A stretch of DNA of 64,000 nt from Paramoeba atlantica (Eukaryota > Protista > Discosea), in NCBI GenBank assembly GCA_977017575.1, contig CDRNVI010000037.1, positions 124,001-188,000 of the forward strand. The letters are read 5' to 3'. Made by a program: the position numbers and the translations under genes. Of the stretch, positions 12,753 through 57,690 are shown piece by piece. The first letter of the stretch is position 1. Every line of letters starts with the position of its first letter. The notes under the pieces are model-generated. The model saw nothing but the letters and a program-made list of their open reading frames with translations, made no database searches and was not told the DNA's origin.

Positions 12753-13117
12753 ATTTCGGCCATTTGTCCATATCAATGAATCAGTTGTTTTTTTCTAGGA
12801 ATAAATTCCGTTCGTTTACCAAGTAAATCCAAAAACTCGTAAACGATATGGCATATTTTCTTTAGCGTGATTTATTAGTATTTCATTGCTCTGCCTTCCG
12901 TGTCTTATCTCAGTACAATGCACAAATGTAGATGAACTTTTATGTGCGAAAGGATGATTTGCAAACGCATTTTGTATTGCTCTGACACAAAGACAAATAC
13001 CCTTGGAAGGGTTAGTGCACATCTTCCACACGTGTAGTCGCTAGTCGGGTCCTTGGTGCGACATCCGTCGTCGCGGAGTGCGCCGATGATATCGGCTATC
13101 GCATCAAGGGCTGTATA

Positions 13118-14292
13118 CAGGGGGGGGCCACGAAAACTGACTAGCTTCGCATTTTAGCCTCGTGAGGATCTCAATCAAATTGAGATCAGGAGATTTCGAA
13201 GGCCAGTCAATAATTTTAATTCCTTCCAGCTTACCTATTCTCCGGGCTGCCCCGTGGCCTGGCGCATTGTCAAGGACAACAGCAGCCCCCGGCCGCCGAT
13301 GCATCCAGTTAAAAAACCTATTTCGCTTCTTCATTGTTCTCAGAAAAACTTCGTTTGTTACGGTTTCATTCTGGGAAAACTCGTGGAAACACGCATCGGG
13401 TACTTCCCAACGCAGACTGGTTGCCATGAATACATGCACTCCCTTCCCCCCGTACCACCTATCCATTTCTACTGGTGTTTCCTTGGGGGGGTCAGTGATT
13501 TTTGCAAGATATGTGATTTTTTTCCCATGTGAACCACATCGGAAAGTCTTCTCGTCACACCATACCACACGGGACAGCTGATCTGGACTCCATCCATCGA
13601 AGTAATCAGCAAGTTGTAATCGGGCAGCCTTGTGCCCAGCAGTTAAGAAAGGTTTGTGTGACATAGTCTTAATGACGTATCCCATCCTTTTCAAACTCCG
13701 TTTTACGATGTTCAGACTACAAGGATAAAGTGTCTTGTCCACTCTCTTGTGTACCCATTTAAACCCCGGACACCCGAATGGCGTGTCTTTCTCATCATCA
13801 ACAAGGGTACAGAGCATAGCACGGAATTCCTCCGTATCAACGGCATTATCGCGCGAGTAGCTCGCACGTGCCACGTCACCTGACTCATCAAAACGTGTCT
13901 TGTACCGATAGACAGAGCTCTCAGAACAGTTCATCATTCGTGCCGTGTCTTCAATACTTGTACCACGATGTCTTTCGTGTGCGCAAACAATGCGTATGGA
14001 ATACGAAGACTGCTCTGGGGACAATTGGCGACGGTTTAATCTATGCCGCTTGCCCATAGTGAAGAAAAAAGAAGAGAAAACCAACTTTTTTACTATTTTT
14101 TATGCTTTTTGCAAAATAAATCGTCTTAAATTTCAGTATTTTCGAAATGCAAAATATCAGGTTTATACAAACGAGTTCTAAATAGCGTAGACACGATATT
14201 CAGAACGAGTTTTCTCGTTTGCAACAAAAATTAGCTCAAACGGCCTCACGAGGCTAAAATGCGAAGCTAGTCAGTTTTCGTGGCCCCCCCTG
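13118..14292 (-). mobile_element. Tc1-like element, deletion derivative of 56130-57690
   Basis: TIR CAGGGGGGG(G)CCACGAAAACTGACTAGC with TA TSD. The ORF is nearly identical to 56338..57450 up to SPDLNLIE, then deleted into the far TIR. Confidence 0.95.
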
Positions 14293-14333
14293 TATATGCG
14301 CCAACGAGCGCATGAACATCAAGCTTAAACGGG

Positions 14334-23364: not shown

Positions 23365-26300
23365 GTCAGGTACCTTGTTGTACCTTGTTGATTTATTTTC
23401 CCCTACTTTTACGACCCTTCATGACCTCGCCACATGCCAGAAGTGGGGAAATCTCACAGGCGTTGCAGGACTCTCATAAGAGACTAGGCAACGTAACTAG
23501 CCGATCCGCCACCTCTCTGACAGGTGCTGAACGCGAGGCCAAGGAACATGCAGCTCAACATGCAAACTCCTACCGAGTCAGCTCCAAAGCTCCTATGAGA
23601 GGTTCACTGAAAACAAACACTGAAAAGAAGGAAACCGCAATAAATACGACCCGGCGATGTAAACATACTTGTAAGGAGAAAACAAAATGCGGCCATCCCT
23701 GCTGCAAGACTGCGCCGAATCCGCCGTCCACTCAGCCCCTTAACATTTCACAATGCAAGCATCCCTGCAAAGACAAGAGTCTGTGCGGCCACCCATGTTG
23801 TAAACGACATCTTCTTCCTACCTGTGTTCCCGAAGATAGTACCACACATGTATCCCAAGGGAATACTGTTACCGATGTAACGAGGAGGACGGAAACAAAC
23901 ACAATGTCCTCTGAAGCCCCATCATCTGAAGGAGTAAAGGATGTACCTGAACCTATCGCCCCGTGCAAACATATCTGCAAGGATAAGGCGAATTGCGGGC
24001 ACCCCTGTTGTAAACGTCACCTCCACACCACTTGTACGAGCGCCGGTAGTGCACCTAGACTAGATCCACAAAGCAGTACGCGCGACAATGGGAGTCAAAA
24101 TCTGGCAGGAGACTCTGGGGGCTTTATGGTGAAAGTACTGCGCCACTTGACCAAGCCCATATTTCAATGTGCGGGCAAACCCCAAACTGCGCAGAACTCC
24201 TCGAACACGGAAGTGTTTTCACCCAGCGGCAGATCCACAAGCGAGGGCTCCAACCACTACGAACGCTCAAGGAAACACGTCGAGGGAGAAATGTCGGCAA
24301 AGAGAAAATTGATTGCCCCAGGAATCGCAAGATCAAACAGCGACAACCCTGCTACAACGCATGCCAACAGAGCTGATCAGCGTGAAGCAAGTAAGGTGCC
24401 CACCTTTCGGAAATCCCCTTCTTCTCCTCCGGAAGGAAAACAACATACTATCTCCTCAACAGCTATCAATCTTGCGTATGAATTATGTAAAGGCCTCCTT
24501 GGCATCCCTCCCCCGGAAGCACGAGCGAAACCACCGCCTCTCAGAAAGATGACTCCCAAGACCGTAAACCGAGGGTCCCAACTATCTCCCAAGCGAGAAC
24601 CTCCCGAATTCGCTATAGAAAAGCTGCAGGAAGGACCGACATTGCGCCTCAGCGCTCGACAGCCCGAACCAGAGCCTCAGAACCCATACAATCTACCATG
24701 TAAACATCCCTGTAAGGACAAAACCACGTGTGGCCACCTTTGCTGCAAAAGAGGGCTTACCCCTGGCATCACAACATCGTCACCCGCACGTATCTCTTCC
24801 TCTGATACCGAAAAGCACCCCCCAGACCGGATAACTGATGAACCATATCGCGACCATCCCAGCAGCACGCCCGAGCACGACGCAGGGGTGGACACTTCCG
24901 ACAACTCCAAAGCAGAGAAAGTCCCGTACCTCCCTGCCCCTTTATCGCCGCCACAGAATCTTTCGATAGTGCCGGAGTCCTGGAACGTCTCGTTCACGCC
25001 TAGTCCCACACGCCGCGGCGTAGAGAAACTACTTATTAATCGTATAAAGTCACCCCACCATACCGACGACTCAGAAGGACTCTTGACAGAACCACCGTTC
25101 CCTCTCTGCACTGCGGACGACGAAGTTCCGGAATGGGTATTCGAGAAGGTCCCTCACGACGTGCCTTCTGGGAATTCGGGGGTCCCTGTAGAAAGACGTC
25201 GCTCGACAGAGAAAGGGAAACAATGCCTACATTTTATACAATCCCGATCAAAGCCTCTGAAACTTCGCCTAGCAAGTGCCCAAGAATGGTTATATTTTCC
25301 GGACGTACGAGCTGCCTGCGAAAGTCAAATCACACGCAGCAGGATTAGCTCCCTGCAGGGAGCGCAGGCAGCCATTTCGAAGGCGCTGAACTCTGGCAAC
25401 CCCACGCACGACATCATAGTAAGAGGATGTTCCGTAGAAGAACTGATGGACCATGGGGCGTGCGATTTCATTACAATTCATAAAGTCGGAAGCCCGGACA
25501 AGTCTTCGCGCCACTCCAGTTGGGTATCTCTGTACCAGGATGCAGCCCTAAAACTTTCAGATTACTATTCCTCTCCGGGTACTCTCAGTAAAGCCGTTCT
25601 TAAGAGACTAAACGGCTCCGAAATTCCCGGGCTTGCAGATTATGTGATAACCCTACATCGACACACACCCATCGACGAAACTCCGCCGGTCTTAGAAGCT
25701 ATTCCGGAGCTTCCAGCATATCGCATAGCAGACCCACCCAGTCGTGTACCCTCTTTGCAATCCTTTGCACAACCCTGCCGCCACACCTGCCGCGACAAAC
25801 TCGGGTGTGCTCATCGTTGCTGTAAAGTCTTCGGTCCCGCTGCTCCTCCAACTGCAGGTTCCACTGCCGCCGAGACCAGCTCTGCCCAGGAATCCAAAGT
25901 ACCTCGCTCGGCGGTTCCACCAGACCTGCAGGAGTATAAAGAACAGGATCTCGATTACCTACTCCGAACAGCCAGGTACATCCAAGGGGGAAAGATATGT
26001 ATCAACTTAACGGACGCACAGTGGCACGACGTTGAGACCAAGGCTCTCAAAAGGTGTGCATTACTCACTCCTGAACAAGACATAGATTCCGCCGTTAGGA
26101 ACGCCGAACTCCTGAGCTCCATACTATCTGTCTCTACCTACGAGGTTGCTCGCGACGTGAATCCCACGAAAGGCTTTTTAATCCGCACAAAGAAAGGTCA
26201 CGCAAAGACCCGATGCAGACCCTTGGAAAGCGAAAAAATAGCCTCGTCCTTCTCCCGGCACCTAAAAGAACTGCAGACAAAACTACGCTATACACATGGA

Positions 26301-28994
26301 AAGGCAGACAGGAACGCCTTAAAACGAACGATCAAGGAAACCAAAAAAGGTGAAAGGGTTTATCATGCGGAGGCCACCGCACAGCGGCAAACACTCGAAC
26401 AACGCCGGGCACTGAAACGCTTTAACAGAAACCCATGGACCGCCGCTAGCGAAACATTGGACAAACCTATCGGTCTTGAAGCCCCAGCCTCCTATCCTAC
26501 ATGCGATGTGCACAGCGTGGAAAAGCACTTTGGTGATACACTTTCTGCTCCTTCAGAGGAATACCACATTCCTCCGTCTGACTCGCTTGGGACCCGTCCT
26601 CTTGTCGACATGTCATGGGAAGAGCTGACCCCGACCGAAATATCCGACGCTCTAATCTCGAAAAGGAATGGCAGTGCCCCAGGTCAAGACACCATCACAT
26701 ATACCATCCTAAAACGGTGTCACAGCGTACACTCACACATCGCTACAGTCTTCAACGCGTTGCTCAAGTATCGCACTTGCCCACCTTCCTGGAAATGCTC
26801 TGTTACCCGCCTAATTCATAAAAATGGAGCTCACGATCAACCCCAAAACTGGCGCCCCATCAGTCTCATCAGTGTTCTAGCTAAGCTTCTCCATTCGATC
26901 ATAAGTCGCAAAATAAACCGCCATCTGGTCGAGGCAGCAGTAATTGATCCATCAATCCAAAAGGGTTTCCTACCGGCCATCAACGGGACACTGGAACACA
27001 CTCAGACGCTGGATGCAATCTTGCAGCACTACAGAAAGAACAAGCTCCAATACTGCTTAGCCCAACTGGACCTATCCAACGCATTCGGTTCAGTCCCACA
27101 CAATGTTATATTTGAGGCGATGCAATGGGCCAAGATCTCCCCGACTCTCCTCGGGTACATCAGTAGTTTATATAACGGAGCGTCTACGCAAATAAAGTGT
27201 TATGAAGGTCTCTCCTCTACAATTCCTGTGCAACGTGGGGTACTCCAAGGCGACACCCTCTCCCCGTCTATATTCCTTATCGTCATGGAAGTAGTACTGC
27301 GTTATATGACACTTAACTTTCCCGCGTACGGACTCGATCTGCCAGGCAATGCGAAATGCTTTATAAAGGCCTACGCTGACGATCTCACTGTCCTCACCAG
27401 CAACCCGAAGGAGTCACAAATCGCACTTGGAGCCCTATCCTCAATCCTCCGCAAAATAGGTTTATCTATAAACGTGAAAAAGAGTAGGGTACAATGCATG
27501 GCCGTGCGACCGGACGATGAACACCCAGGTTACATGACACGCCGTCCACAAATTCTGGTCAATCACATTCCCATTCCCCAAATCTGTGATGCAGGTAGCA
27601 CCTTTCTGGGCATGACCATCGCCCCTGGAGCACAACAGTCCCGTGCGCTGTTCATGAAGCTACGTCCTCTCATTAATTCATGGCTCAGAAATATCGATAA
27701 GAGCGCCCACGACCTCCCTTCGCGACTATGGATATATCAGCATGCCATTATCTCCCGCTTGCGCTTCTCGCTTACGATCCACCCGTGCATCACTATGAAC
27801 TTTGTCCTCCGACTCCAGAAACTCTGTACCAACTTCCTGCGGCGTTGGATTAACGTGGCGCGTGGCTCTAGTCCCGAAGCAATTTATTCATCGCGCGGCT
27901 GGGGACTGAGGAGCCTGTCGCAACTGTGGCATGAATGTACTGCAGACCTTATGTGCCAGTTAAAGAAATCCAAAGATCCGGCTGCCGCAGCTGTGCTTCG
28001 GAACAAAATACGGGAAGAAGAGGAGAGACGCTTGAAAGGACAAATACGGCCCGCAACTCACATAACGCACTGCTTGAACGACCGATCTCGCGCCAGGAAA
28101 ACTCTCATTGACCTGAACGAGGAGCGTATGATTAACGCTCTGCGACGCCGCACCACGGTTGCCATACAGTGGTGGGACACGAACACGGAGGAAGATCAGG
28201 CGAAAGATTTTGCAGCTGCCATTAACGGCCTTAGGAGCACTTCACTGAGCAGATTCGCTACACATGTGATGGTCCAAGCCCCACTTCCTACCCGGACCAT
28301 GCTCAGAACATGGGGGAAGAATGGTGCAAATAGTGTGTCTTGCCGTATCTGCAACTCAGCACCCGAAACCTTAAGGCACCTGCTCTCAGGTTGCAGGACA
28401 TCCTTAGACCAAGGACGCTACACGTATCGACATGACAGAGTGTTGAGCGTCCTTGCGAACGCGATCGTCGGCTCCCCCAACACCTCCTGGGCCTCATTCG
28501 ACCTCGAGGGCCTCCGTAACCTCCCAAGTTGGTGGGCAGACCTAGAAACCACTCTGCGTCCAGATGGCCTGGTCAGGCTTCACGATGGAACTGAATTTAT
28601 CGTTGAACTGACCGTACCCTGGGAAGACAACATCGCGGAGGCACACTGCCGCAAAACGGAAAAATATCAGAATATATTGCATCGCCGCAGGATGGATCAC
28701 CCGAACACACATCTGCTGTGTATGGAGGTGGGTGTAAGAGGATTGCCGGCTTCCTCTCTTCGGCAGGTAGCCCGCCTTTTTGGGAGTGACAAAGGGCTGT
28801 CCACGGAATGCCAACTTGAAGCCATACGCGAAGCAATTCGTAGTAGCTTTGTTATTTGGCTAAACCGGGAATCACCCGACTGGAAAGGGGGCGGCTAGGC
28901 TAGTAAAACAGCCTATGCGGGGTCGTCGTATGCGACCGTAGCATAGGTAGAAATTTACCTCTGCAGATCTAAATATGATTCTGCATTGAATAAA
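23365..28994 (+). mobile_element. Full-length RLE-type (HERO-like) non-LTR retrotransposon, 5630 bp
   Basis: Single long ORF, 56-nt 5' leader, and 96-nt hairpin-rich 3' UTR ending TGAATAAA. Boundaries are set by rejoining the LRR gene. Confidence 0.92.
23421..28898 (+). CDS. Polyprotein: 5 Cys/His fingers + reverse transcriptase + CCHC + restriction-like endonuclease (1825 aa from first ATG)
   Basis: RT motifs WRPISL, LDLSNAFGSVPH, GVLQGDTLSP, AYADD. CRICNSAPETLRHLLSGC, GRYTYRHDRVL, RPDG...ELTVPWE...RKTEKY, EVGVRG. No stops or frameshifts. Confidence 0.95.
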   Translation: MTSPHARSGEISQALQDSHKRLGNVTSRSATSLTGAEREAKEHAAQHANSYRVSSKAPMRGSLKTNTEKKETAINTTRRCKHTCKEKTKCGHPCCKTAPNPPSTQPLNISQCKHPCKDKSLCGHPCCKRHLLPTCVPEDSTTHVSQGNTVTDVTRRTETNTMSSEAPSSEGVKDVPEPIAPCKHICKDKANCGHPCCKRHLHTTCTSAGSAPRLDPQSSTRDNGSQNLAGDSGGFMVKVLRHLTKPIFQCAGKPQTAQNSSNTEVFSPSGRSTSEGSNHYERSRKHVEGEMSAKRKLIAPGIARSNSDNPATTHANRADQREASKVPTFRKSPSSPPEGKQHTISSTAINLAYELCKGLLGIPPPEARAKPPPLRKMTPKTVNRGSQLSPKREPPEFAIEKLQEGPTLRLSARQPEPEPQNPYNLPCKHPCKDKTTCGHLCCKRGLTPGITTSSPARISSSDTEKHPPDRITDEPYRDHPSSTPEHDAGVDTSDNSKAEKVPYLPAPLSPPQNLSIVPESWNVSFTPSPTRRGVEKLLINRIKSPHHTDDSEGLLTEPPFPLCTADDEVPEWVFEKVPHDVPSGNSGVPVERRRSTEKGKQCLHFIQSRSKPLKLRLASAQEWLYFPDVRAACESQITRSRISSLQGAQAAISKALNSGNPTHDIIVRGCSVEELMDHGACDFITIHKVGSPDKSSRHSSWVSLYQDAALKLSDYYSSPGTLSKAVLKRLNGSEIPGLADYVITLHRHTPIDETPPVLEAIPELPAYRIADPPSRVPSLQSFAQPCRHTCRDKLGCAHRCCKVFGPAAPPTAGSTAAETSSAQESKVPRSAVPPDLQEYKEQDLDYLLRTARYIQGGKICINLTDAQWHDVETKALKRCALLTPEQDIDSAVRNAELLSSILSVSTYEVARDVNPTKGFLIRTKKGHAKTRCRPLESEKIASSFSRHLKELQTKLRYTHGKADRNALKRTIKETKKGERVYHAEATAQRQTLEQRRALKRFNRNPWTAASETLDKPIGLEAPASYPTCDVHSVEKHFGDTLSAPSEEYHIPPSDSLGTRPLVDMSWEELTPTEISDALISKRNGSAPGQDTITYTILKRCHSVHSHIATVFNALLKYRTCPPSWKCSVTRLIHKNGAHDQPQNWRPISLISVLAKLLHSIISRKINRHLVEAAVIDPSIQKGFLPAINGTLEHTQTLDAILQHYRKNKLQYCLAQLDLSNAFGSVPHNVIFEAMQWAKISPTLLGYISSLYNGASTQIKCYEGLSSTIPVQRGVLQGDTLSPSIFLIVMEVVLRYMTLNFPAYGLDLPGNAKCFIKAYADDLTVLTSNPKESQIALGALSSILRKIGLSINVKKSRVQCMAVRPDDEHPGYMTRRPQILVNHIPIPQICDAGSTFLGMTIAPGAQQSRALFMKLRPLINSWLRNIDKSAHDLPSRLWIYQHAIISRLRFSLTIHPCITMNFVLRLQKLCTNFLRRWINVARGSSPEAIYSSRGWGLRSLSQLWHECTADLMCQLKKSKDPAAAAVLRNKIREEEERRLKGQIRPATHITHCLNDRSRARKTLIDLNEERMINALRRRTTVAIQWWDTNTEEDQAKDFAAAINGLRSTSLSRFATHVMVQAPLPTRTMLRTWGKNGANSVSCRICNSAPETLRHLLSGCRTSLDQGRYTYRHDRVLSVLANAIVGSPNTSWASFDLEGLRNLPSWWADLETTLRPDGLVRLHDGTEFIVELTVPWEDNIAEAHCRKTEKYQNILHRRRMDHPNTHLLCMEVGVRGLPASSLRQVARLFGSDKGLSTECQLEAIREAIRSSFVIWLNRESPDWKGGG

Positions 28995-29395
28995 CACCTG
29001 TCGGGTAATAAATTTACAGGATCGCTCGAGTTGCAACATTTGCCACCTTCCTTAACGAAATTTTGTTGCCAAAACAATTGTTTCTCCGGATTCGTTGAAT
29101 TCGGTCGGCTTCCTTGGAAATTAGATTCCCTGCGGATCTCCGACAACGCTGAACTCTATGGGGAAATACCTAAATCTCTTCTCTTGAACACGGATGTTCG
29201 CTTTGCGCATACCAAAGTACGTTTGAAGAATCTGTGAAGTATATCAGCTGAAAGGAACACGTCTGAACAAAATTTACCACTTATATGAGTGTCAAATATC
29301 AATGGTAGATACAGTGTTTGATACAGGGTTCGAAAAACAAGATTTGTTTTTTCAAACAAGAGTTGAGCCAAATCAGTAATGTATTTATTCATTTA

Positions 29396-34418: not shown

Positions 34419-36175
34419 ATGGCCCCACCACTTCTATTCTTTAACGCGAGCCAAGTGACTCTATCCTCACCGTTGCCACACGAAACTGTTGCCGTACTGC
34501 CCTTCCCCGATGATACTTCAGCTACGCCATCCACCGCATTAATATTGAATGCATCTAACCAGCTTGCTGAGCAGCCGCGGAAGGTTCGGGTGGATCTTAC
34601 CATACAGCAAAAAAAAACAACCTATGTGCTAGTATAGATGCCGGCAAGTCTGTAAGCGTGGCCGCCCGAGATTACAAGGTCGAGGTAAGCACGGTACATA
34701 GAGTTTATCGGAAAAAAGAAGATTGGTATAAATTTACTCAACTTGGCTTCGGGAAATTGTTTCAGTATCATCCCCCCCGAGCAAAGAAAGAATTATATGA
34801 AAAAGGGTTGACGCAACTGCTTTTGCTACGCGGGTCTCTTTCGGCAGTCACGAAACCGACAATGTTGGGGTACTTTGCTGAAATTTCAGAGCACTTCTGT
34901 TCCCTTACCGACAAAGGAAAAGAAAAATTTTGGATTCGTTTTTGCACCTTCGCCAATATTTCGCGACGAAGAGTCAATGGAGCAACCCAAATGGTCCCAA
35001 AAGACATGGACGAGCGTATAGAAGCCTTTTTGAATATGATAGCTCTGCGAAATTGTGATCGCGGAGGATACGCTGTAATTGTAACAGGGGACGAGACCTG
35101 TGTTGTGTGGGAGCCCGTCAATGAAATCACATACGACACTGAAGGGACAAAGCGTGTAAAGGTTTTAACTACAGGTAAGGAGAAGAAGACACTGACTGCG
35201 TGGTTTTGGGGCCGCTCTGCTACGAACCAACGGCATGCAGAAAGCACGTGGGAGCATAAGGTGTTTCCTCCGCACTTAATTTGGGAAGCCCATTCAGATT
35301 CTGGGAAGGTTTCCAAAGAGGTGCTCCGGGCGGCAGAAAAGTACAATTGTACGGCAACAACGACAACAAGCGAGTGGAACACAGGAGGGTCATTTAAAAA
35401 ATGGGCTGAAGCGGAATTCTTTGACAGAATGAAGTATCCTCCGCGGAAGACACTTATTATTTTGGATCTGTACGCTGCTCATCGGACAGCGGAATTATTA
35501 TTGTTCTTTCGTGAGAGAGAAATCGATGTTCAATTCGTTCCAGGAGGTTGCACTTCCAAAGGACAGCTCATGGATATGGCCATCAACCAGCCTTTTAAAA
35601 AGTACTACAAGGAATGTTTTGCCTCCTGGCGTGCGTCGACGCATCATGAAATTGTCCGGCCAACGCGAAGTCTTATAACAAAATTTGCCACCCAGGCTCT
35701 GGCAAAAGTGAATTCAGAAGAATACGAAATCGAATTTAATAAGTTGCTTGTTCCAGCACTTACCAAAAATCTCGCACAGATTCCCATAGAATCCAGAGCC
35801 GAGCTCAGCCTCTCCTCAAGCGTTATCACGGAATCGATGGTGGATGCATCAGCCATCGCTTCACGCGTATCACAACTGAGCATTGTCGAGGAATCTCTTG
35901 AACCAAATCAGGTCCCTCGTCTGCCAACGCGCGTTCCTGTAAAAAATCGAATTAGTCCCACAATCGCAGCGAAAGCCATGAAGTCCGCGATAGAGTCAGC
36001 GCGTAACAGGAACTCAGCGCTTAACGCAACCCCAGTACAGGAGTGTTGTTATTGCACGCGAGTGAATTTAACTCTACGGGAGTGTAGTGAACCTGGGTGT
36101 TTAACGAAATTTCATCACATGTGTGCAATTGAAGAAAAGGGGGAAGAGAATGACAATTTCTGCGCAAAGCATTAA
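34419..36175 (+). mobile_element. pogo-like transposase (HTH + DDE_1, DD35D) with C-terminal PHD-like finger; one frameshift at A9 34609-34617
   Basis: GDET, IILDLYAAH, VPGGCTSKGQLMD. N-terminal HTH across the shift (KVRVDLTIQQK|NNLCASIDAGKSVSVAARDYKVEVSTVHR). C-terminus CYC...CSEPGC...HHMC...CAKH. Confidence 0.88.
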
Positions 36176-44842: not shown

Positions 44843-45727
44843 ATGGGTTTCCTTGCTCTTCTTGAGTTGAAAATGCTTTCTTCTCATGATCCCACAGAGT
44901 CTCCTTTGAAGAAGCGCCGAAAGTTTAACGTTTCCCTTCCCGACGATGCTACCGTACAGATCCCTCCAAGCACCCGATCGAGTGGGGCAAAGGTAAGCAT
45001 GGCCAATTTACCTCAAGAATATGAACTCGTACGTCTTGTACGTGATATTTTAAATCCGCACGAGACATGGGATGCGAAAACTCCAGCCTGCGAGTGGGAC
45101 GGTGTCGGCTGCAGCCAGGGCGACGTCGTCACGCGTATCCGCTGGACAGGCCGCGACCTCCACGGCTCACTCCATTTGTCTCATTTCATGCAAACGATGA
45201 AACGGTTCAACGTGGGGCGAAACGCGCTGACGGGTGAAATCGATCTCCTCGACTTGCCCTCATCCTTGCGTTATCTTTGCCTCAGTGAGAACCGATTTGT
45301 GGGCGCATTGGATCTTACCTCGCTCCCGCAGAAGCTGGCAGAACTGGATATTTACGACAATTCGTTTACAGAAGGCGTGTGTTTGACGCGACTTTCTCCA
45401 GCTCTGGAGGGGTTGTATCTTTCCTCCAATAATCTTACGGGATCGGTCGATTTGACTTCTCTGCCTCAGAGTATGAAACAACTTGGTTTACGGGACAACT
45501 TGCTTTCAGGTGAGATATCTCTAAGTCAGCTCCCGCAAAATCTCCTGGGGTTGTCTTTGCGTAATAATGACTTTTGTGGTGTCGTTGACTTTCGACGTCT
45601 CCCCTTTACGTTGCGCTGGCTTGATGTATCGGACAATGAGAGAATCACGGGCGAGATTGCACCCTCTCGGTACCTGAATTTGCAGTTTTCAGTCGCAAAT
45701 ACAGGAGTTCACGTAGTGGTTGAGTAG
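44843..45727 (+). CDS. Leucine-rich repeat protein
   Basis: NLPQEYEL, CEWDGVGC, about 7 LRRs. First ATG at 44843. Confidence 0.92.
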   Translation: MGFLALLELKMLSSHDPTESPLKKRRKFNVSLPDDATVQIPPSTRSSGAKVSMANLPQEYELVRLVRDILNPHETWDAKTPACEWDGVGCSQGDVVTRIRWTGRDLHGSLHLSHFMQTMKRFNVGRNALTGEIDLLDLPSSLRYLCLSENRFVGALDLTSLPQKLAELDIYDNSFTEGVCLTRLSPALEGLYLSSNNLTGSVDLTSLPQSMKQLGLRDNLLSGEISLSQLPQNLLGLSLRNNDFCGVVDFRRLPFTLRWLDVSDNERITGEIAPSRYLNLQFSVANTGVHVVVE

Positions 45728-45970
45728 CTTTTATGGCAATTTGAACTTAAACGCAGTTTTGGGACTACTTTTTTTCGAAAACCGTGCTGATTTTCAGCAT
45801 GTTTCTATTCCATTACCCAAATTATCACAAGTATATCCATTGCCAAGATTGTCGCAAGTGATAATGCCAAAAGTATCACAAGTGTCGTTCAAGTAAGGGA
45901 ATATTCTAGACCAGTGGTGACTTAATCAAGTTTGGTTCTTCATATCAAATTTAGTTTTCTACGCTTCGTC

Positions 45971-46930
45971 ATGCTTATTTTTCTAGCAGTTGACAGCAGT
46001 CCTCCACAAAAAAAGCGATGCATGGAATCACAAACGGAAGTTCAAAAGTTGGAAACTCCACCGGGATCTACCAAAACTCGACTTGGTCGAATTCAAGCCG
46101 TAAATGTACCCCCTGAGTTCGCCATGCAGCAAGTCATCTCGCGTCTGGAGAATCCATTGCCCGAATGGAATAGTTCTGTACCCATCGATAAGTGGCCCGG
46201 AGTTGTGTGTTACGACGGCGTGATTGATGAAATTAATTGGAGTAAATATGCACTGAAAGGACCCTTACTCTGGGGTCACTTGCCACAGACAATTACAGAA
46301 ATACACCTCAAAGAAAATTATCTGAGTGGCACCGTAGTTGTCGAGGCGTTACCTCCAGGTTTGGAGAAATTTACGGTATCGTATAATGAACTGGAAGGAA
46401 CTCCCGATCTCGCTCATTTTCCAGATACGCTGAATCACTTGCGTCTAGAGGAAAACGATTTTTCGGGTGTTGTAGACTTTTCTTCCCTTCCTCCCTATTT
46501 GGTAACTTTATACTTGAATGGAAATGTGTTAAGTGGAGATGTGAAGTGGGACTCGCTTCCCAACTCACTAGAAGAAATTCACCTCTCCTACAACGAATTT
46601 TACGGCGAGGTGGCTTTGACAGAACTTCCAAGTAATCTAGTCGAGCTTCACGTTGATCACAATCACTTCAATGGAGAGATTCACCTTGGTTCATTATCAT
46701 GTCCAAAGTATTTGAAAACTCTGTACCTGAATGACAACGATCTAGAAGGATGGATAACTTCCAAATCACTTCCCGAATCTCTGCTGATCCTTAACGTTTC
46801 AAACAACTCGAAACTCACCGGTGAGGTGGATTTAGAAAAGGTATCATACATGTATTTCTATTGTTTCGCTGAAACTAATATCACGTACATCAATTTAAAT
46901 GAAGAAAATAGCCTCTTGAACTTAAGTTGA
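45971..46930 (+). CDS. Leucine-rich repeat protein (longest copy)
   Basis: TRLGRI, KWPGVVC, about 9 LRRs. First ATG at 45971. Confidence 0.92.
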   Translation: MLIFLAVDSSPPQKKRCMESQTEVQKLETPPGSTKTRLGRIQAVNVPPEFAMQQVISRLENPLPEWNSSVPIDKWPGVVCYDGVIDEINWSKYALKGPLLWGHLPQTITEIHLKENYLSGTVVVEALPPGLEKFTVSYNELEGTPDLAHFPDTLNHLRLEENDFSGVVDFSSLPPYLVTLYLNGNVLSGDVKWDSLPNSLEEIHLSYNEFYGEVALTELPSNLVELHVDHNHFNGEIHLGSLSCPKYLKTLYLNDNDLEGWITSKSLPESLLILNVSNNSKLTGEVDLEKVSYMYFYCFAETNITYINLNEENSLLNLS

Positions 46931-47202
46931 ACTGAGAAGAGAAAACGTGTATGGTTCCGGGCCTAAGAGCATCGTAGACCAGAAAGGAAGCAGTCCCACA
47001 CCGAAAGAAAAATTTCGTATATTATAAAAAAAGTCACAAAAAATTATTTTGGGCCCCAAAAATCGTTATGTCAACTGTCCCCCCGGTATTTACTCCCAAC
47101 TATTTTCTTGGAGCTTTGACGTGGTTAAATCACGTGTTAAAAAACTGTGGTTCAGTAGTAGATAAAAAACTCTTTCCTTGCACATTTCTTATTTATCTAT
47201 CC

Positions 47203-48541
47203 ATGAGGTTTTTGTATCGTGCGACAGATTCGGTGTCGGGCGTCTCACGTCCTGCCAAAGTCGGCGCACTTTCTTTACCAACAGAGTACCAGTTGATGCA
47301 ACTTGTAAATGGCATTGAAAATCCTCATGCTACGTGGAGCTCAGGTACACCCGCATGTGAATGGCGTGGTGTAAAATGTAATGAAGCAGGAAAGGTGGTT
47401 GATATTCGTTGGGATTCTATGGATCTCCGTGGGGTTTTTAATTGTGATCATTTATCCAGCGAATTAAAAGTGCTTATTGTTCATCGAAACGAACTGTCGG
47501 GAGAAGTTTCTTTTAATAATTTACCCGCTGAGTTGACCGCTCTTTACCTTGTTGGTACTTTTTTTTCCTAGCTCATCTTTTCTCTCCCGGAAACGGGCAT
47601 ATTTTTACACTGTCAATGCCCGTTTCCGGATGGCGCTAGGAGAGGAACTGTCCCTCTTGTCGCAAAGTAGGGGTGCGCCTCCCTTCCCTCATCTCCCAGC
47701 ACCCCGCTCGGAACACGGTTCCGAGTCCCCATGCGCTGCAGGACCCTACTACGGGACCACGCGGCGTGCCTTCACTATCCGGCGACACCGGTACTTCTGC
47801 GCGTAGGAGGCTTCCATATACCGGAAGTCTCCCACACGGCGAGCAAACACGTTGTATGCGTGTTCTAGAGGATGTTCTATGCACCTCTCTTGCTCACCAG
47901 CCGTGGCGGATTCTGTGGGACCCCGATACCCATGATGCTTCATGAACCATGACTCCATTTGCCAGCATGCATCCATGGCCCTGACCATGTTGTATCATGA
48001 ACCATGGAAGTCATTTGTAGCATGTACGATGGGAATATCATCCGCGTCCCACAAATCCGTATATTTTTCCTGGCGCACTGCGCTTACAAAACATCTCGGG
48101 ACATCTTATCCCGATGAGGCCTTCTCTTTTCGCTTTCCTGGGGAGGATATCCCGCGCTTTTCCCTGTGTTGCCTCGGAAGGCGAAAAGGTCCAGCAGGGA
48201 ACGTTGATTGCGCTTACCCCTGCTCGACCTAATTATCTCTACAGGTACTGCCCTGTATGAACAAACAACTTTGCATGAACCGATTCACCGGCCACCCTGA
48301 TTTTCGTCATTTGCCGCAAAATTTGTGTGAACTTCACATTGCCAATAATTATTTTGAAGGTCATGTAGTTCTAGATTCTCTTCCATCATCGCTAAATCTT
48401 TTGTATCTATCGTGGAATATGGAGCTAGAAGGAAAGCTGGTCGTGGGAGGGAATTTGGAATATTTAAGATATGACGTTCGCGGTACGAAAATTTCAGTGA
48501 GTGATGGTATCTTGTGGAACGATGAAGGTAAGTGGAAGTAA
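47203..48541 (+). pseudogene. LRR gene disrupted by a 721-bp insertion (halves 47203-47544 and 48266-48541)
   Basis: Joining gives LPAELTAL|QLCMNRFTGHPDFRH, an exact 23-aa repeat, in frame, 205 aa. Confidence 0.9.
47545..48265 (+). mobile_element. Non-autonomous, structured SINE-like retroelement, 721 bp
   Basis: Starts TACCTTGTTG (as in the HERO-like 5' end) and ends in the hairpin TACAGG/CCTGTA + TGAACAAA (as in the HERO-like 3' end). No coding signal. The alternative boundary 47551-48271 gives the same length. Confidence 0.8.
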
Positions 48542-49174
48542 GAATAATACAAGATAAATGATCGAAAAATTATCAATTCTCAATAAAAAACACGAATTTT
48601 GAACAATTCACATCATACATTGTATAGCATGAACTTTTTTTCTTTTCATTTTTTGATCAATTTCAGTCGAATTACAATGCGTCCAAGCTGTCAAACTATA
48701 ATTCGTATGATACGTATTGTTAGTATACAGAAAATACTTCGACACAAAAATATACGTGTACAATTACGTAGAATCGAAAGCTTGTGTTGCATGTTATAAG
48801 TGTTAAAAACCTTTCAAATGTTTTCCTCGCAAAAAACAAGTTGGTTTACACTGCAGGTTCTGAAATATTTTGAGAAGTAAGAAAAACAATAGAAAAGAAG
48901 TTGACGTGTTTCCTCCTGAGAAAGTTTAATCGTTTCTCTGCGTGCTGAGGGTCAAACAACTACGAGATTTGTAGTCTAGATCGGCTCTATTCAGAGAACT
49001 TTTATTGTCTAGGGTGGGTAAAGTGAAGGAAAATTTGCCTTTTCCGAAAAAATATTAGTTTTCCCGAAACAATATTTTAAAAAGATACAAAAAAGTCTTT
49101 ATCGTTGCTTCTATGATCTCCTTACGCCTTTATTCACTCGCTCTTCATACTTCTTCGCTAAATTTCAATTGAAC

Positions 49175-49514
49175 TTCCCCCCCGCGGAATTTTGAGTTTT
49201 TTTGTCCGTTTTTGCTCATCTTTGTTGCGAACGAGACATCTCGTTCCCCTAGTGAAGCGCTTTGGCACTTTTTTTCATAGGGACCCCCTAGTGCTCATAT
49301 GACGACCCGAAAAACAGCCAAAACAAGATTTTTGATAAATGCGAACCTTGGAAGGAAGTCTAAAACCATGTGTTTTGGACCCAGGGGGTACCAGGGGGTC
49401 CCTACAAAAAAAAGTGCATCAAAGCGCTTCACCAGAGAAGCGAAATCTATCCAACGCTGCAAAAATGAGAAAAAACAGATAAAAAACTCAAAATTCCGCG
49501 TGGGAGGGGGGGAG
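49175..49514. mobile_element. MITE related to the ends of the 60358-61830 Tc1 element
   Basis: Inverted arms GCGGAATTTTGAGTTTTT / AAAAACTCAAAATTCCGC. Internal GGACCCAGGGGG(T/C)ACCAGGGGGTC is shared with about 61690-61720. Ends are approximate. Confidence 0.55.
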
Positions 49515-50194
49515 ATATCTTGAAACCACTGTATATCCACTTTTTTTTGCCCAGCATCACCATTCTGTTACATTGACCTGGACGTCAGCCCAAAATATCA
49601 GCAACGTGAAGCTATACCTTCACTATTTGATACAAAAGCCGTTAGCATTCGTTACCCTACCGAGGTGAAAGGTACAATCTTACAAATTTTACTCTGACGC
49701 ATGTTGGTATCACTGTATGATACGCATGTTATTCATATTCAAAACCAGCATGTGTGGTCTCATAATCATCCCAAACAGACATTCTTGTGCTGCAATGTTC
49801 GGGATGAGTGCTTCTGAACTACGGTTTGGTACATGCATAAAGATTTCCTTGGTGCTGTTATTTCTTGACGTTTCTACGATGGTCTGGACAACTTGTGCCC
49901 CTTCTTGTCGTACACGCCGAGGCAAATTCCCATTTTTTTATGAAAAAGCGAATTCTCCTTCACCTTCCCCTCTAGGGTCTCGACAAGGCTTTTTTGTGGA
50001 ATAGAGTTTTAAATTGATTAATTTAGATTCGTCCTTCGTAAATCAATTTTTAGAGGCTAAGAGCTTACTGGAGCGGTAGTTATACATTGACGGAAATATT
50101 TTTTCTGGTCACAGTAACATTTTGCTCATTTTTCAACTAATTTTATAAGAAGTTTGTCTTCGTGTACTTGAATCAGCGAAAAATTATTTTACCT

Positions 50195-50890
50195 ATGAAT
50201 CGCTCTTGCATTTCTCGTCCTGGAAAGACACGAGGAGTAGGAATGCCGCAAGAGTATGAACTCGCACAGTTTACGCGCAGCATGCTTAATCTACATAACT
50301 CATGGAATACAAGCACAACGGCTTGTAGTTGGAGTGGAGTAAAATGTGACAAAGACGAGCGTATTATCAAAATTAAGTGGTTTGAACGTCGAATTTCCGG
50401 GGAGGCGCGCTGGGAATATTTGCCGTCGTATTTAAATGACTTAGATGTCTCCTCCAATCAACTAGAAGGGTCACTTGATCTGACTTGTCTCCCTTCGGGA
50501 CTAGATCGATTTGATGTGAGCGCAAACATGCTTTCTGGATCTGTTACTCTTCATGCTCTGCCCCCTCTGTTAAAAATGATTGACCTCTCGGACAATCGTT
50601 TTTCATCTGACATTGATCTCACTAATCTTCCACCCGAGCTATATTTCTTTGGCATTTCGAATAACAGATGCACTGGATCATTGAATTTCGATAGTATTCC
50701 AGAAAAGCTCGATTTTTTATATTTGGATGGAAACGATTTTGATACAGAAATTGATTTTTCGCGATTTCCTACAACTCTCAATGGCTTATTTATACAAAAT
50801 AATCCTAAGGTTAGGGGTGTCGTTTCAGAAAGCGTGATATCATCCCTTAAACAGTATGACTGGAAAGGAACTGAAATATTGGAAAAATAA
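50195..50890 (+). CDS. Leucine-rich repeat protein
   Basis: SRPGKTRG..MPQEYEL, CSWSGVKC, LRRs. First ATG at 50195. Confidence 0.92.
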   Translation: MNRSCISRPGKTRGVGMPQEYELAQFTRSMLNLHNSWNTSTTACSWSGVKCDKDERIIKIKWFERRISGEARWEYLPSYLNDLDVSSNQLEGSLDLTCLPSGLDRFDVSANMLSGSVTLHALPPLLKMIDLSDNRFSSDIDLTNLPPELYFFGISNNRCTGSLNFDSIPEKLDFLYLDGNDFDTEIDFSRFPTTLNGLFIQNNPKVRGVVSESVISSLKQYDWKGTEILEK

Positions 50891-55751: not shown

Positions 55752-56129
55752 AATTGTAGGCTACAACTTACAACCAAAAAGCGTACCGATTTTTTTGCAA
55801 ATTATTTGGGGGGGGGGGGGCATAGTACATGTACTGTAACTACAATTGTAATAGTACATGTACTGTGACCCCCCCTTTAATGTACCCCCCCTTAACTTAC
55901 AAGCCACTTACTCCAGGGTGTTAACTTTGTGTTCTTACCAACTACGCTACCTCACCCTAATGGTACGGTGCTTAGTATGTAGTTTAGCATTGTGCGAAAT
56001 ACCGTACTACGGAGATGTATCACACAACATTTGTGTGCAACAAAGTCATTCCGTCCATCCTTATTTTTGATTCTAAGCATATTTATATACCTATTATAAA
56101 ATAGTATATTGCATATTTATTTGCATATA

Positions 56130-57690
56130 CAGGGGGGGCCATGAAAACTGACTAGCTTCGCATTTTAGCCTCGTGAGGCCGTTTGAGCTAATTTTTGTTG
56201 CAAACGAGAGATCTCGTTCTGAATATCGTGTCTACGCTATTTAGAACTCGTTTGTATAAACCTGATATTTTGCATTTCGAAAATACTGAAATTTAAGACG
56301 ATTTATTTTGCAAAAAGCATAAAAAATAGTAAAAAAGTTGGTTTTCTCTTCTTTTTTCTTCACTATGGGCAAGCGGCATAGATTAAACCGTCGCCAATTG
56401 TCCCCAGAGCAGTCTTCGTATTCCATACGCATTGTTTGCGCACACGAAAGACATCGTGGTACAAGTATTGAAGACACGGCACGAATGATGAACTGTTCTG
56501 AGAGCTCTGTCTATCGGTACAAGGCACGTTTTGATGAGTCAGGTGACGTGGCACGTGCGAGCTACTCGCGCGATAATGCCGTTGATACGGAGGAATTCCG
56601 TGCTATGCTCTGTACCCTTGTTGATGATGAGAAAGACACGCCATTCGGGTGTCCGGGGTTTAAATGGGTACACAAGAGAGTGGACAAGACACTTTATCCT
56701 TGTAGTCTGAACATCGTAAAACGGAGTTTGAAAAGGATGGGATACGTCATTAAGACTATGTCACACAAACCTTTCTTAACTGCTGGGCACAAGGCTGCCC
56801 GATTACAACTTGTTGATTACTTCGATGGATGGAGTCCAGATCAGCTGTCCCGTGTGGTATGGTGTGACGAGAAGACTTTCCGATGTGGTTCACATGGGAA
56901 AAAAATCACATATCTTGCAAAAATCACTGACCCCCCCAAGGAAACACCAGTAGAAATGGATAGGTGGTACGGGGGGAAGGGAGTGCATGTATTCATGGCA
57001 ACCAGTCTGCGTTGGGAAGTACCCGATGCGTGTTTCCACGAGTTTTCCCAGAATGAAACCGTAACAAACGAAGTTTTTCTGAGAACAATGAAGAAGCGAA
57101 ATGGGTTTTTTAACTGGATGCATCGGCGGCCGGGGGCTGCTGTTGTCCTTGACAATGCGCCAGGGCACGGGGCAGCCCGGAGAATAGGTAAGCTGGAAGG
57201 AATTAAAATTATTGACTGGCCTTCGAAATCTCCTGATCTCAATTTGATTGAGAATTTGTGGAGTATGATGGATAAGTACATCCACACCCATCTTCGTCCG
57301 AAAAATCGAACGGAATTGCAAGCTGCTATTCCTAAGGCGAAGGACTACGTGTTGGCAGAATGTCACGAGGCGTATGTGAACACGTTACAGAGTCCTCCCA
57401 CACGCCTCGCTACTCTACGTGAGCGTGGAGGTGGGAATACTGGATATTAAGACTTAGTTTCTACCGCGAAAGGCCAAAAATTACTATTTTGCGCTCTTTT
57501 TTCAATTTGCAAAATCTCAAAAATTTCAGTTTTTCTACCCATGGGAAAGGCTTGCTTTCATCAGTTTTTGTACTCTAAATAGCGTAGACACGATATTCAG
57601 AACGAGATCTCTCGTTTGCAACAAAAATTAGCTCAAACGGCCTCACGAGGCTAAAATGCGAAGCTAGTCAGTTTTCGTGCCCCCCCCCTG
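56130..57690 (+). mobile_element. Full-length Tc1-like element, 1561 bp, with TIRs of about 115 bp
   Basis: Long near-perfect TIRs, TA TSD, intact ORF. Confidence 0.96.
56365..57450 (+). CDS. Tc1-like transposase, DD32E, 361 aa
   Basis: WCDEKTF, VLDNAPGH, WPSKSPDLNLIENLW, N-terminal HTH. Confidence 0.93.
   Translation: MGKRHRLNRRQLSPEQSSYSIRIVCAHERHRGTSIEDTARMMNCSESSVYRYKARFDESGDVARASYSRDNAVDTEEFRAMLCTLVDDEKDTPFGCPGFKWVHKRVDKTLYPCSLNIVKRSLKRMGYVIKTMSHKPFLTAGHKAARLQLVDYFDGWSPDQLSRVVWCDEKTFRCGSHGKKITYLAKITDPPKETPVEMDRWYGGKGVHVFMATSLRWEVPDACFHEFSQNETVTNEVFLRTMKKRNGFFNWMHRRPGAAVVLDNAPGHGAARRIGKLEGIKIIDWPSKSPDLNLIENLWSMMDKYIHTHLRPKNRTELQAAIPKAKDYVLAECHEAYVNTLQSPPTRLATLRERGGGNTGY

What the first reader, a model, noticed from the sequence alone, without database searches (positions are those of the whole stretch)
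47545..48265. 721-bp non-autonomous partner sharing both ends and the target site with the RLE element
Seen at the 5' end: it begins TACCTTGTTG, the decamer present twice in tandem at 23371-23390 in the large element. Seen at the 3' end: large element TTACCTC-TGCAGA...TCTGCA-T-TGAATAAA (28955-28994); small element TTATCTC-TACAGG...CCTGTA-TGAACAAA (48233-48265). The 6-bp stem is kept through two compensatory changes (G-C to A-T, A-T to G-C). Both have an upstream bulged hairpin with a 7-nt loop (TCGTATG / TTGATTG). By eye the interior has no similarity to the large ORF, so it does not look like a simple deletion derivative. Inference: a SINE-like parasite mobilised in trans by this RT/RLE family, with the 3' hairpin as the recognition element.
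Basis: partly seen in the sequence, partly recalled or inferred. Interest (0 to 1): 0.9.

Follow-up and report, generated by a model that had tools for sequence, protein, structure and literature searches.

The report
Small hitchhiker of an LRR-targeting retrotransposon
The 721-bp stretch is a multi-copy, non-coding mobile element that borrows the copying machinery of an R2-like retrotransposon family. It shares that family's folded RNA signals and its insertion site inside leucine-rich-repeat genes, but the "shared 5' end" is really the tail of the host's spliced leader.

Summary
Window 47545-48265 is a discrete insertion: cutting it out restores an intact 249-aa LRR gene. It is also a repeat, with about 10-15x the word depth of its flanks in three runs of the same organism.

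Its last ~80 nt form the same two-hairpin module as the 3' end of the 5.6-kb R2-like (RT + restriction-like endonuclease) element at 23365-28994. The same module ends five related RT elements and three related small elements in another genome (ENA ERZ24900291). Both stems covary.

The small element also shares a 38-nt 5' hairpin with the RT elements, and it sits at the same LRR codon position (after LPxxLxxL).

One correction: the decamer TACCTTGTTG is the last 10 nt of the host's kinetoplastid/diplonemid-type spliced-leader exon. Other copies carry 21-28+ nt of that exon, and a real SL RNA gene with it was found. It therefore marks retrotransposition of a leader-bearing RNA, not an element-specific end.

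The interior matches no RT element sampled, and the window's large element is probably not the closest partner.

Verdict: a SIDE/SINE-like non-autonomous partner of an RLE family, that is, a new variant of a known kind. Unchecked notes of this scan had already flagged SL-headed retroelements and a candidate SL-headed SINE elsewhere in this genome.

The parts
47521..47544 (+). Upstream target: LRR codons L-P-A-E-L-T-A-L of the host gene (47068..48541). The insertion follows the L4 codon of LxxLxLxxNxFxG.
   Evidence: Removing 47545-48265 gives ...LPAELTALQLCMNRFTG..., co-linear with intact paralogs.
47545..47554 (+). Last 10 nt of the host spliced-leader exon (truncated SL head).
   Evidence: The SL RNA gene on L008 ends ...ACAGTTTCTGTACCTTGTTG|GTATGAG. 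Other copies in the same organism extend to ...GATACAGTTCCTGTACCTTGTTG (loose ends).
47555..47684 (+). 5' region conserved among small elements (77-79% to L004 and L005 small elements). It holds a T-run and a 14-bp perfect hairpin (arms 47587-47600 / 47616-47629).
47731..47768 (+). 5' hairpin motif shared with the 5' regions of all RT elements of the family. In those elements it lies inside the N-terminal coding sequence.
   Evidence: It is 92% identical to L003:3790-3826, and 5 of 9 predicted pairs show changes on both sides. The counterpart in the large element is 23458-23495.
47847..47874 (+). Internal extra copy of the CG-TTGTATG-CG hairpin.
   Evidence: 89% to L005:8668-8694.
48187..48230 (+). 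Penultimate bulged hairpin with 7-nt loop TTGATTG.
   Evidence: Covariation score 0.453 against 0.148 in shuffles (0/500).
48236..48257 (+). Conserved TCTC lead-in (48236-48239) plus the terminal hairpin TACAGG-loop-CCTGTA (48240-48257).
   Evidence: CM R1 scores 30.8 bits, E 4e-4.
48258..48265 (+). 3' tail TGAACAAA. The LRR frame resumes at 48266 (CAA CTT = Q L).
23365..28994 (+). Autonomous family member. From 5' to 3': 6 extra nt, two SL-tail decamers (23371-23390), the 5' hairpin (23458-23495), an 1837-aa ORF with RT, zinc knuckle and RLE, a bulged hairpin (28911-28948), the terminal hairpin (28962-28985) and a tail.
13040..13116 (+). First part of a third insertion: a 5'-truncated 3' remnant of a small-element-like copy. 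It sits after an LPxxxxLV motif of an LRR-gene pseudo-copy and is split by a DDE_3 TIR transposon.
   Evidence: 89% to the 3' end of the L004 small element.
14297..14322 (+). Second part of that remnant: terminal hairpin TGCGC...GCGCA plus tail.
   Evidence: 26/26 identical to L004:6778-6803.

Best explanation
Window 47545-48265 is a non-autonomous non-LTR retrotransposon. It works like a SIDE or SINE and parasitises an R2-like family that encodes reverse transcriptase plus a restriction-like endonuclease.

Shown:
- It is a discrete, multi-copy, non-coding insertion in an otherwise intact LRR gene.
- It carries the family's 3' two-hairpin RNA module and a 5' hairpin.
- It sits at the family's preferred target, directly after the codons for LPxxLxxL.
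- It starts with the tail of the host spliced leader.

Inferred mechanism:
1. The element is transcribed by read-through within the host's same-strand gene array.
2. Its RNA receives the spliced leader, most simply by trans-splicing.
3. The family's protein, made from an autonomous copy, binds the 3' hairpins, and perhaps the 5' hairpin as R2 protein binds its 5' RNA.
4. The protein nicks the LRR-coding DNA at the motif and copies the RNA by target-primed reverse transcription.
5. The copy usually fails to reach the cap-proximal end of the leader, leaving 10-28 nt of it.
For: Discrete insertion. Excising 47545-48265 restores a 249-aa ORF co-linear with paralogs. The large element's excision does the same in a different repeat of a different paralog, so the two are independent events.

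Multi-copy. Depth is 10-15x the flanks in X1 and X4 across the whole 721 bp. Other copies have different upstream sequence and a longer SL head, and a variant lacks 47610-47952.

Non-coding. No Pfam domain in any ORF of 79 aa or more that was tested, no tRNA, no Rfam family. The + strand folds with z = -14.

Partner family. The large ORF matches R2Bm from the RT through the endonuclease region (E 6e-36) and Pfam RVT_1.

Shared 3' module.
- Terminal stem: 93.8% paired against 74% shuffled, 4 of 6 pairs covary, score 0.637 against 0.216, 0/500 shuffles reach it.
- Penultimate stem: score 0.453 against 0.148, 0/500.
- The same fold is predicted in four members.

Shared 5' hairpin.

Homologous small elements of 575-580 nt, with the same heads and tails, occur in another genome.

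Target. The LPxxLxxL junction is seen for the window's large element, the window's small element, L005 A/B and L004a. Mimics of the motif flank the L004 small element (LPEKLWI inside an RT ORF) and the window remnant.

SL identity.
Against: - No RNA evidence: the one probable RNA run has nothing on this locus.
- No transposition or binding assay exists.
- Only one copy from this organism was read in full. Copy number rests on assembler word depth, which is not a true copy count.
- The interior (about 230-640) and the first ~140 nt match no RT element sampled, so descent from the family is not shown.
- The window's large element fits the family 3' model poorly (13.8 bits, E 1.5, 12-nt loop).
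- Three of the RT elements in the other genome (L001, L002, L005) are not in recognisable LRR sequence.
- How a daughter copy regains a leader at exactly the same junction is unexplained, because there is no AG at the SL/body boundary.
Confidence: 0.8

Rival explanations
1. It is a spliceosomal intron, or an 'introner', at a homologous position in paralogous LRR genes. On this reading the GT...polypyrimidine-CAG ends are splice signals rather than retrotransposon ends.
For: Both inserts can be read as GT..AG with an in-frame join: small CTT|GTTGG...CTACAG|G, large GTCAG|GTACC...CTGCAG|A (read directly). TCTCTRCAG looks like a 3' splice site.
Against: - The two inserts lie in different repeats of different paralogs.
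- The two 5' cut positions would not be homologous.
- The AG is not conserved in the family: TGCGCC, TGCTAT and TGCACT occur at the same place, and those positions covary as a stem.
- The element is multi-copy with an SL head, and the large one encodes RT/RLE.
- No joint skipping the insert was seen in any run.
Confidence: 0.05
2. It is a plain internal-deletion derivative (a SIDE in the strict sense) of an autonomous element of this family, rather than a chimeric or independently built SINE-like element.
For: It keeps, in the right order, the SL head, the 5' hairpin that lies in the RT elements' 5' region, and the 3' two-hairpin module. This is the layout described for R2 SIDEs (PMC3414825).
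Against: The first ~140 nt after the SL and the interior have no match in the six RT elements sampled. These parts are conserved only among small elements of the two genomes.
Confidence: 0.25
3. The SL head does not come from trans-splicing of the element's RNA. Either the reverse transcriptase jumped templates to an SL-bearing RNA, or a master copy sits in an SL RNA gene and is transcribed from the SL promoter.
For: - R2 reverse transcriptase adds foreign RNA sequences at 5' ends in vivo (U12 and tRNA; PMC3414825).
- The L005 RT element is preceded by ~51 nt matching the SL gene, more than a 38-39-nt exon.
- There is no AG at the SL/body junction of daughter copies.
Against: - The junction is always exactly at the exon's 3' end (10 of 10 elements), as trans-splicing gives. 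A jump to whole SL RNA would add intron sequence.
- An apparently unrelated retrocopy also carries the SL (L006/L007).
- The elements' 3' ends are not followed by SL intron sequence.
Confidence: 0.2
4. It is a host structured non-coding RNA gene that happens to lie here (the reading of note s1-377588).
For: Very stable fold on the + strand (z = -14).
Against: It interrupts a coding exon. It is multi-copy with differing flanks. It has retrotransposon heads and tails shared with RT elements, no Rfam match, and no coverage in the probable RNA run.
Confidence: 0.03

Closest known systems
R2 SIDEs (Short Internally Deleted Elements) of Drosophila (Eickbush & Eickbush 2012, PMC3414825)
   Same: A short non-coding partner of a site-specific RLE/R2-type element. 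It keeps a 5' RNA module and the 3' RNA needed for target-primed reverse transcription, inserts at the partner's own site, and has variable or truncated 5' junctions.
   Different: - The 5' end is defined by a host spliced leader rather than a self-cleaving HDV-like ribozyme; none was detected.
- The target is a protein-coding LRR motif, not 28S rDNA.
- The interior is not demonstrably derived from the partner.
- The host is a euglenozoan.
SLACS / CZAR / CRE: RLE retrotransposons of trypanosomatids
   Same: RLE-type non-LTR elements in a host with a kinetoplastid-type spliced leader, and physically associated with SL sequence.
   Different: Those elements sit inside SL RNA genes (from memory: between exon nt 11 and 12). 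Here the SL exon tail is the element's own 5' head and the insertions are in LRR genes. Whether the RT belongs to the CRE or the R2 clade was not tested.
ingi/RIME and L1Tc/NARTc pairs of trypanosomes
   Same: An autonomous element paired with a short non-autonomous one in Euglenozoa.
   Different: Those are APE-type elements, with the short partner a clear deletion derivative and a shared 5' Pr77/HDV-like hallmark (PMC4035085 abstract). Here the family is RLE-type, carries an SL head, and shares a 3' hairpin module.
SL-relic retrogenes of dinoflagellates (PMC6050394, PMC5585692)
   Same: Genomic retrocopies begin with the spliced leader, sometimes with tandem relics. The window's large element and L003 carry an extra relic decamer.
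   Different: Those are retroposed host genes. Here the leader heads a transposon family and its parasite, in a different phylum and with a different leader.
Stringent LINE/SINE pairs sharing a 3' stem-loop (for example eel UnaL2/UnaSINE1; from memory)
   Same: The partner's RT recognises a conserved terminal stem-loop shared by LINE and SINE.
   Different: There is no pol III-derived head (no tRNA, 5S or 7SL). The helper is RLE-type and site-specific.

Membership tests
Non-autonomous non-LTR retrotransposon (SIDE/SINE-like) | Repeated in the genome with defined ends | tested here: met
   Word depth is 10-15x the flanks across the whole element. Unique contigs end within ~30 nt of both ends, and other copies have different upstream sequence. 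Homologous 575-580-nt elements occur in another genome.
Non-autonomous non-LTR retrotransposon (SIDE/SINE-like) | No reverse transcriptase or other coding capacity | tested here: met
   The longest ORF is 96 aa. The five ORFs tested (79-96 aa) have no Pfam match at E<=0.1.
Non-autonomous non-LTR retrotransposon (SIDE/SINE-like) | 3' end shared with an autonomous element | tested here: met
   The two-hairpin module and tail are shared with 5 RT elements, and both stems covary.
Non-autonomous non-LTR retrotransposon (SIDE/SINE-like) | Same insertion site and signature as the autonomous partner, including 5' truncation | tested here: met
   The LPxxLxxL junction is shared. 5'-truncated copies are L005-A and the window remnant. 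No target duplication is seen in either window insertion.
Non-autonomous non-LTR retrotransposon (SIDE/SINE-like) | Mobilised in trans by the partner's protein | not testable with these tools
   Needs a TPRT or retrotransposition assay.
SINE in the strict sense | Head derived from a pol III transcript (tRNA, 7SL, 5S) with an internal promoter | tested here: not met
   No tRNA and no Rfam family at E<=10 apart from a chance snoRNA hit. The head is an SL exon tail.
SIDE in the strict sense | Both ends co-linear with the autonomous element, with only the interior deleted | tested here: inconclusive
   The 5' hairpin and the 3' module are co-linear. The first ~140 nt and the interior match none of the six RT elements sampled.
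R2-like / RLE non-LTR retrotransposon (the partner) | RT domain followed by a zinc knuckle and a restriction-like endonuclease | tested here: met
   The alignment to R2Bm 8gh6 covers its residues 387-1032 (E 6e-36). RVT_1 and zf-RVT also match. CCHC and RPD...E..T motifs are visible in the C-terminus.
R2-like element | 5' end made by an HDV-like self-cleaving ribozyme | tested here: not met
   No ribozyme family in Rfam at E<=10 over 47300-48500, or at gathering score over the window. A divergent ribozyme cannot be excluded.
CRE/SLACS/CZAR | Insertion within the SL RNA gene exon | tested here: not met
   The insertions are in LRR sequence. The SL tail lies directly 5' of the element body, and no SL intron follows the 3' end.
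Spliceosomal intron / introner | Conserved GT...AG boundaries | tested here: not met
   The AG is absent in 4 of 9 family members at the aligned position, and those positions covary as a stem.

The most novel reading that the evidence does not exclude
In this euglenozoan lineage an R2-like family has replaced the 5' ribozyme by the host's trans-splicing. It has retargeted from multicopy RNA genes to a protein-coding repeat motif (LPxxLxxL of LRR genes). The small element is then nature's minimal cargo for that machine: leader tail, one 5' hairpin and a 3' double hairpin are the only family-shared RNA features. That would define the cis requirements of a site-specific integrase-free insertion system aimed at coding DNA.
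Probability: 0.35. Interest if true: 0.8.

Novelty: new variant of a known kind. Interest (0 to 1): 0.62.

Why it matters
Non-autonomous partners of RLE/R2-type elements are rare; the Drosophila SIDEs are the main described case. A second, independent case is useful because comparing helper and parasite marks out which RNA parts the protein probably needs.

Here those parts are a covarying terminal hairpin, a bulged hairpin with a T(C/T)G(T/A)(A/T)TG loop, and a 5' hairpin. All three are directly testable by binding and TPRT assays.

The finding also shows that in this organism retrotransposon RNAs carry the spliced leader, which ties transposition to the host's mRNA processing. And it shows a site-specific element family living inside a protein-coding gene family, which may shape the turnover of LRR genes.

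Tried and rejected
- Rfam over the element (E<=10) and over the whole window (gathering score): nothing relevant.
- ARAGORN: no tRNA.
- blastn of the small element against the large one and the rest of the window: only 10-14-nt chance hits.
- Earlier findings searched by sequence: blank.
- Exact-protein look-ups of two ORFs inside the element, meant to fetch other copies: not on record.
- Extending two contigs of the other genome to 24 kb: no further copies.
- CM search of the three metagenome loci: no 3' modules.
- First try of the look-up of sequencing runs failed as busy and worked later.
- Idea rejected: a shared ancient insertion inherited through gene duplication. The two inserts lie in different LRR units of different paralogs.
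- Idea rejected: the small element's start is SL intron. Only GTA is shared with GTATGAGAAGC.
- Idea rejected: the 3' GYATGA is SL intron carried along. What follows is never GAAGC.
- Idea weakened: the terminal ATG gives an in-frame restart of the host gene. It is in frame in the window but out of frame in L005-B (read).
- My first inference of exact ends from k-1 overlaps was loosened, because contig overlaps are not constant.

Full report
**Setting.** The window is eukaryotic. It is rich in DNA transposons and short repeats. It carries a same-strand cluster of small intronless leucine-rich-repeat (LRR) genes at 11491, 22750, 44816, 45932, 47068 and 50162. Two of these genes are interrupted. 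One is cut by a 5.6-kb element whose 1837-aa ORF has an RVT_1 domain. That ORF aligns to the Bombyx R2 protein from the reverse transcriptase through the endonuclease region (8gh6, E 6e-36). The other is cut by the 721-bp stretch of this finding.

Removing exactly 47545-48265 restores a 249-aa ORF reading ...LPAELTAL|QLCMNRFTG..., co-linear with intact paralogs. Removing 23365-28994 restores ...LPASLTYL|HLSGNKFTG... in the other gene. The two inserts lie in different LRR units of different paralogs. They are therefore independent insertions at the same motif position, not an inherited interruption. Neither has a target duplication. Both host ORFs are otherwise intact, which points to recent events.

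**It is a repeat.** Contigs of three runs of the same organism were laid on 45600-50400. Summed word depth is about 85-91 in the flanks of X1 and 880-1370 across the element. X4 shows the same contrast (roughly 0-28 against 500-710). Unique contigs stop at 47574 and restart at 48241. Contigs from other copies align from 47560 onward and are preceded by different sequence. A variant copy replaces 47610-47952 with 30 other letters. Word depth is not a true copy count, so "about ten or more copies" is an estimate. No contig skips the insert, and the one probable RNA run has nothing on this locus, so there is no evidence on expression or splicing.

**It does not code, and it folds.** The five ORFs tested inside the element (79-96 aa, the longest being 96 aa) have no Pfam match. 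There is no tRNA and no Rfam family. The + strand folds far better than shuffles (z = -14; the minus strand gives -6.8).

**Relatives from another genome.** A protein search with the RT half found five relatives at about 50-56% identity, all on long contigs of one ENA assembly, ERZ24900291. Their loci (L001-L005) hold six RT elements. They also hold three small non-coding elements homologous to the window's: L004 6229-6803, L005 8540-8982 (5'-truncated) and L005 8975-9555. The window's small element matches them over nt 1-138 (77-79%) and in two interior blocks.

**The 3' module.** All members end in the same layout:
- a bulged hairpin whose inner stem closes on CG / CG around a 7-nt loop (TCGTATG, TTGTATG, TTGATTG, TTGTGTG...);
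- a short spacer ending (A/T)ATCTC;
- a terminal hairpin;
- then TGA and an A-rich tail.

In an alignment of eight terminal hairpins, 93.8% of cells pair, against 74% in shuffles and 15-56% in slid controls. Four of six pairs change on both sides (for example A-U / G-C / U-A). The covariation score is 0.637 against 0.216, and 0 of 500 shuffles reach it. The penultimate stem gives 0.453 against 0.148 (0/500), even though two rows with 6-nt loops are out of register.

A covariance model of the terminal module gives these scores:

| Match | Score |
|---|---|
| Window's small element | 30.8 bits, E 4e-4 |
| Relatives | 31-41 bits |
| Window's large element (12-nt loop, ACCTC, TTGA) | 13.8 bits |
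| Third site, window 14291-14319 | 16.3 bits |

With only 8-10 related sequences the shuffle control overstates significance. The slid controls and the number of pair types are the sounder support.

**A third insertion in the window.** The hit at 14291-14319, together with 13040-13116, is a 5'-truncated 3' remnant. It is 89-100% identical to the 3' end of the L004 small element. A Tc1/IS630-like transposon (13112-14299, DDE_3) splits it. It lies right after CTT CCA ... CTA GTC (LPxxxxLV) in a decayed copy of an LRR-gene start.

**The 5' decamer is the spliced leader.** In the other genome every element, RT or small, is preceded by the same ...ATAAAGATACAGTTTCTGTACCTTGTTG, with unrelated sequence further upstream.
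- This sequence occurs nowhere else in those loci.
- CAGTTTCTGTAC is the hallmark of the 39-nt euglenozoan spliced leader (review PMC3795323; 55 papers).
- A metagenome scan for the 20-mer found a real SL RNA gene. In it the sequence is followed by the canonical intron start GTATGAGAAGC (L008). The scan also found an SL-headed retrocopy whose ORF has no Pfam match (L006/L007).
- In the window's own organism, other copies of this small element are preceded by ...AAAAGATACAGTTCCTGTACCTTGTTG.

So TACCTTGTTG is the last 10 nt of the leader exon. The window copy is truncated within the leader. The large element, like L003, carries an extra relic decamer. The head shows that the copied RNA carried the leader joined exactly at the exon end. 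Trans-splicing explains this most simply. It is not an element-specific terminus.

Open points on the leader:
- Most copies lose likeness to the SL gene about 28 nt from the exon end, while L005 keeps about 51 nt.
- Daughter copies have no AG at the leader/body junction, so how the junction is regenerated is not explained.
- Template jumping by the RT, documented for R2 (PMC3414825), or a master copy in an SL gene remain possible.

**A shared 5' hairpin.** Nt 187-223 of the small element (47731-47768) are 92% identical to L003:3790-3826. The same hairpin occurs in all RT elements and all small elements. In the RT elements it lies inside the N-terminal coding region (...ALQD...). The alifold consensus has 9 pairs, and 5 of them show changes on both sides. 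The large element's version (23458-23495) is the most divergent. By analogy only, R2 protein also binds an RNA segment near its ORF start.

**Target.**
- Clear LRR junctions after LPxxLxx(L): the window's large element, the window's small element, L005 (...LPPNIDVL | A + B | TLSNCQFTG) and L004a (...KLPLRLEH |).
- Mimics of the motif: the L004 small element inside an RT ORF at LPEKLWI, and the window remnant.
- Possible decayed cases: L003 and L002-minus.
- Not in recognisable LRR sequence: L001, L002 and L005-RT.
- The 3' flank usually starts CA(A/C)(C/T)T.

**Rivals.** The intron reading fails. The AG of TCTCTRCAG is not conserved and those positions covary as a stem. The two inserts are not at homologous gene positions, and the element is an SL-headed repeat. 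A strict deletion-derivative origin is possible but unproven, because the first ~140 nt and the interior match none of the sampled RT elements. A host ncRNA gene is unlikely for a multi-copy insert in a coding exon.

**Comparison and verdict.** The closest known system is the R2 SIDE of Drosophila (PMC3414825). The element works like one, but with a host leader in place of a ribozyme, an LRR-coding target in place of rDNA, and a euglenozoan host. It is not a SINE in the strict sense, having no pol III head. It is also not a CRE/SLACS-type SL-gene insertion. It is a new variant of a known kind.

Notes of this scan (unchecked) had already flagged SL-headed retrotransposons and a candidate SL-headed SINE elsewhere in this genome. 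I reached the leader reading, before seeing them, and tested it.

Noticed in passing
window 13112-14299 (-) and 56123-57253 (+): Two 99% identical copies of a TIR DNA transposon. Its ORF has DDE_3 and HTH domains (Tc1/IS630-like). One copy splits the retroelement remnant.
   Followed up: partly
window 49142-49624: Another short repeat with about 20x word depth in X1 and X4, and many opposite-strand joints (MITE-like).
   Followed up: no
window 34658-36175: ORF with a DDE_1 (pogo-like) transposase domain and a PHD-like zinc finger.
   Followed up: no
L008 (JGI metagenome contig Ga0316204_10168667), minus strand, 1-60: A bona fide SL RNA gene: exon ...ACAGTTTCTGTACCTTGTTG followed by GTATGAGAAGC. 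tRNA-like segments lie just upstream.
   Followed up: partly
L005 3310-3360; L001 3350-3390: The L005 RT element is preceded by ~51 nt matching the SL gene, more than a 38-39-nt exon. Most other copies lose likeness upstream of ATAAAG (~28 nt). Either the exon is longer here, or that copy sits in an SL gene.
   Followed up: partly
L004 2719-2770; window 23371-23390; L003 3709-3728: Tandem relics of the leader at element heads: a 20-nt piece twice in L004a, and an extra decamer in L003 and in the window's large element. This suggests repeated rounds of leader addition.
   Followed up: no
L006/L007 (Ga0209636/Ga0209635), minus strand near 9329: An SL-headed retrocopy (leader variant TTCCTG, as in the window's organism) of a 602-aa ORF with no Pfam match. 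An MTTB-like (trimethylamine methyltransferase) ORF lies on the same contig.
   Followed up: no
window 47609-47699: In run X2 a contig spans the left junction but differs from the window at 13 places inside the element, mostly in the loop of the long hairpin. This is either a strain difference or an assembly mix of copies.
   Followed up: no
window 48257-48541 and 28986-29237: The element tails supply an in-frame ATG (small) or TTG (large) ahead of the downstream LRR codons. In L005-B the ATG is out of frame, so this is probably chance.
   Followed up: partly
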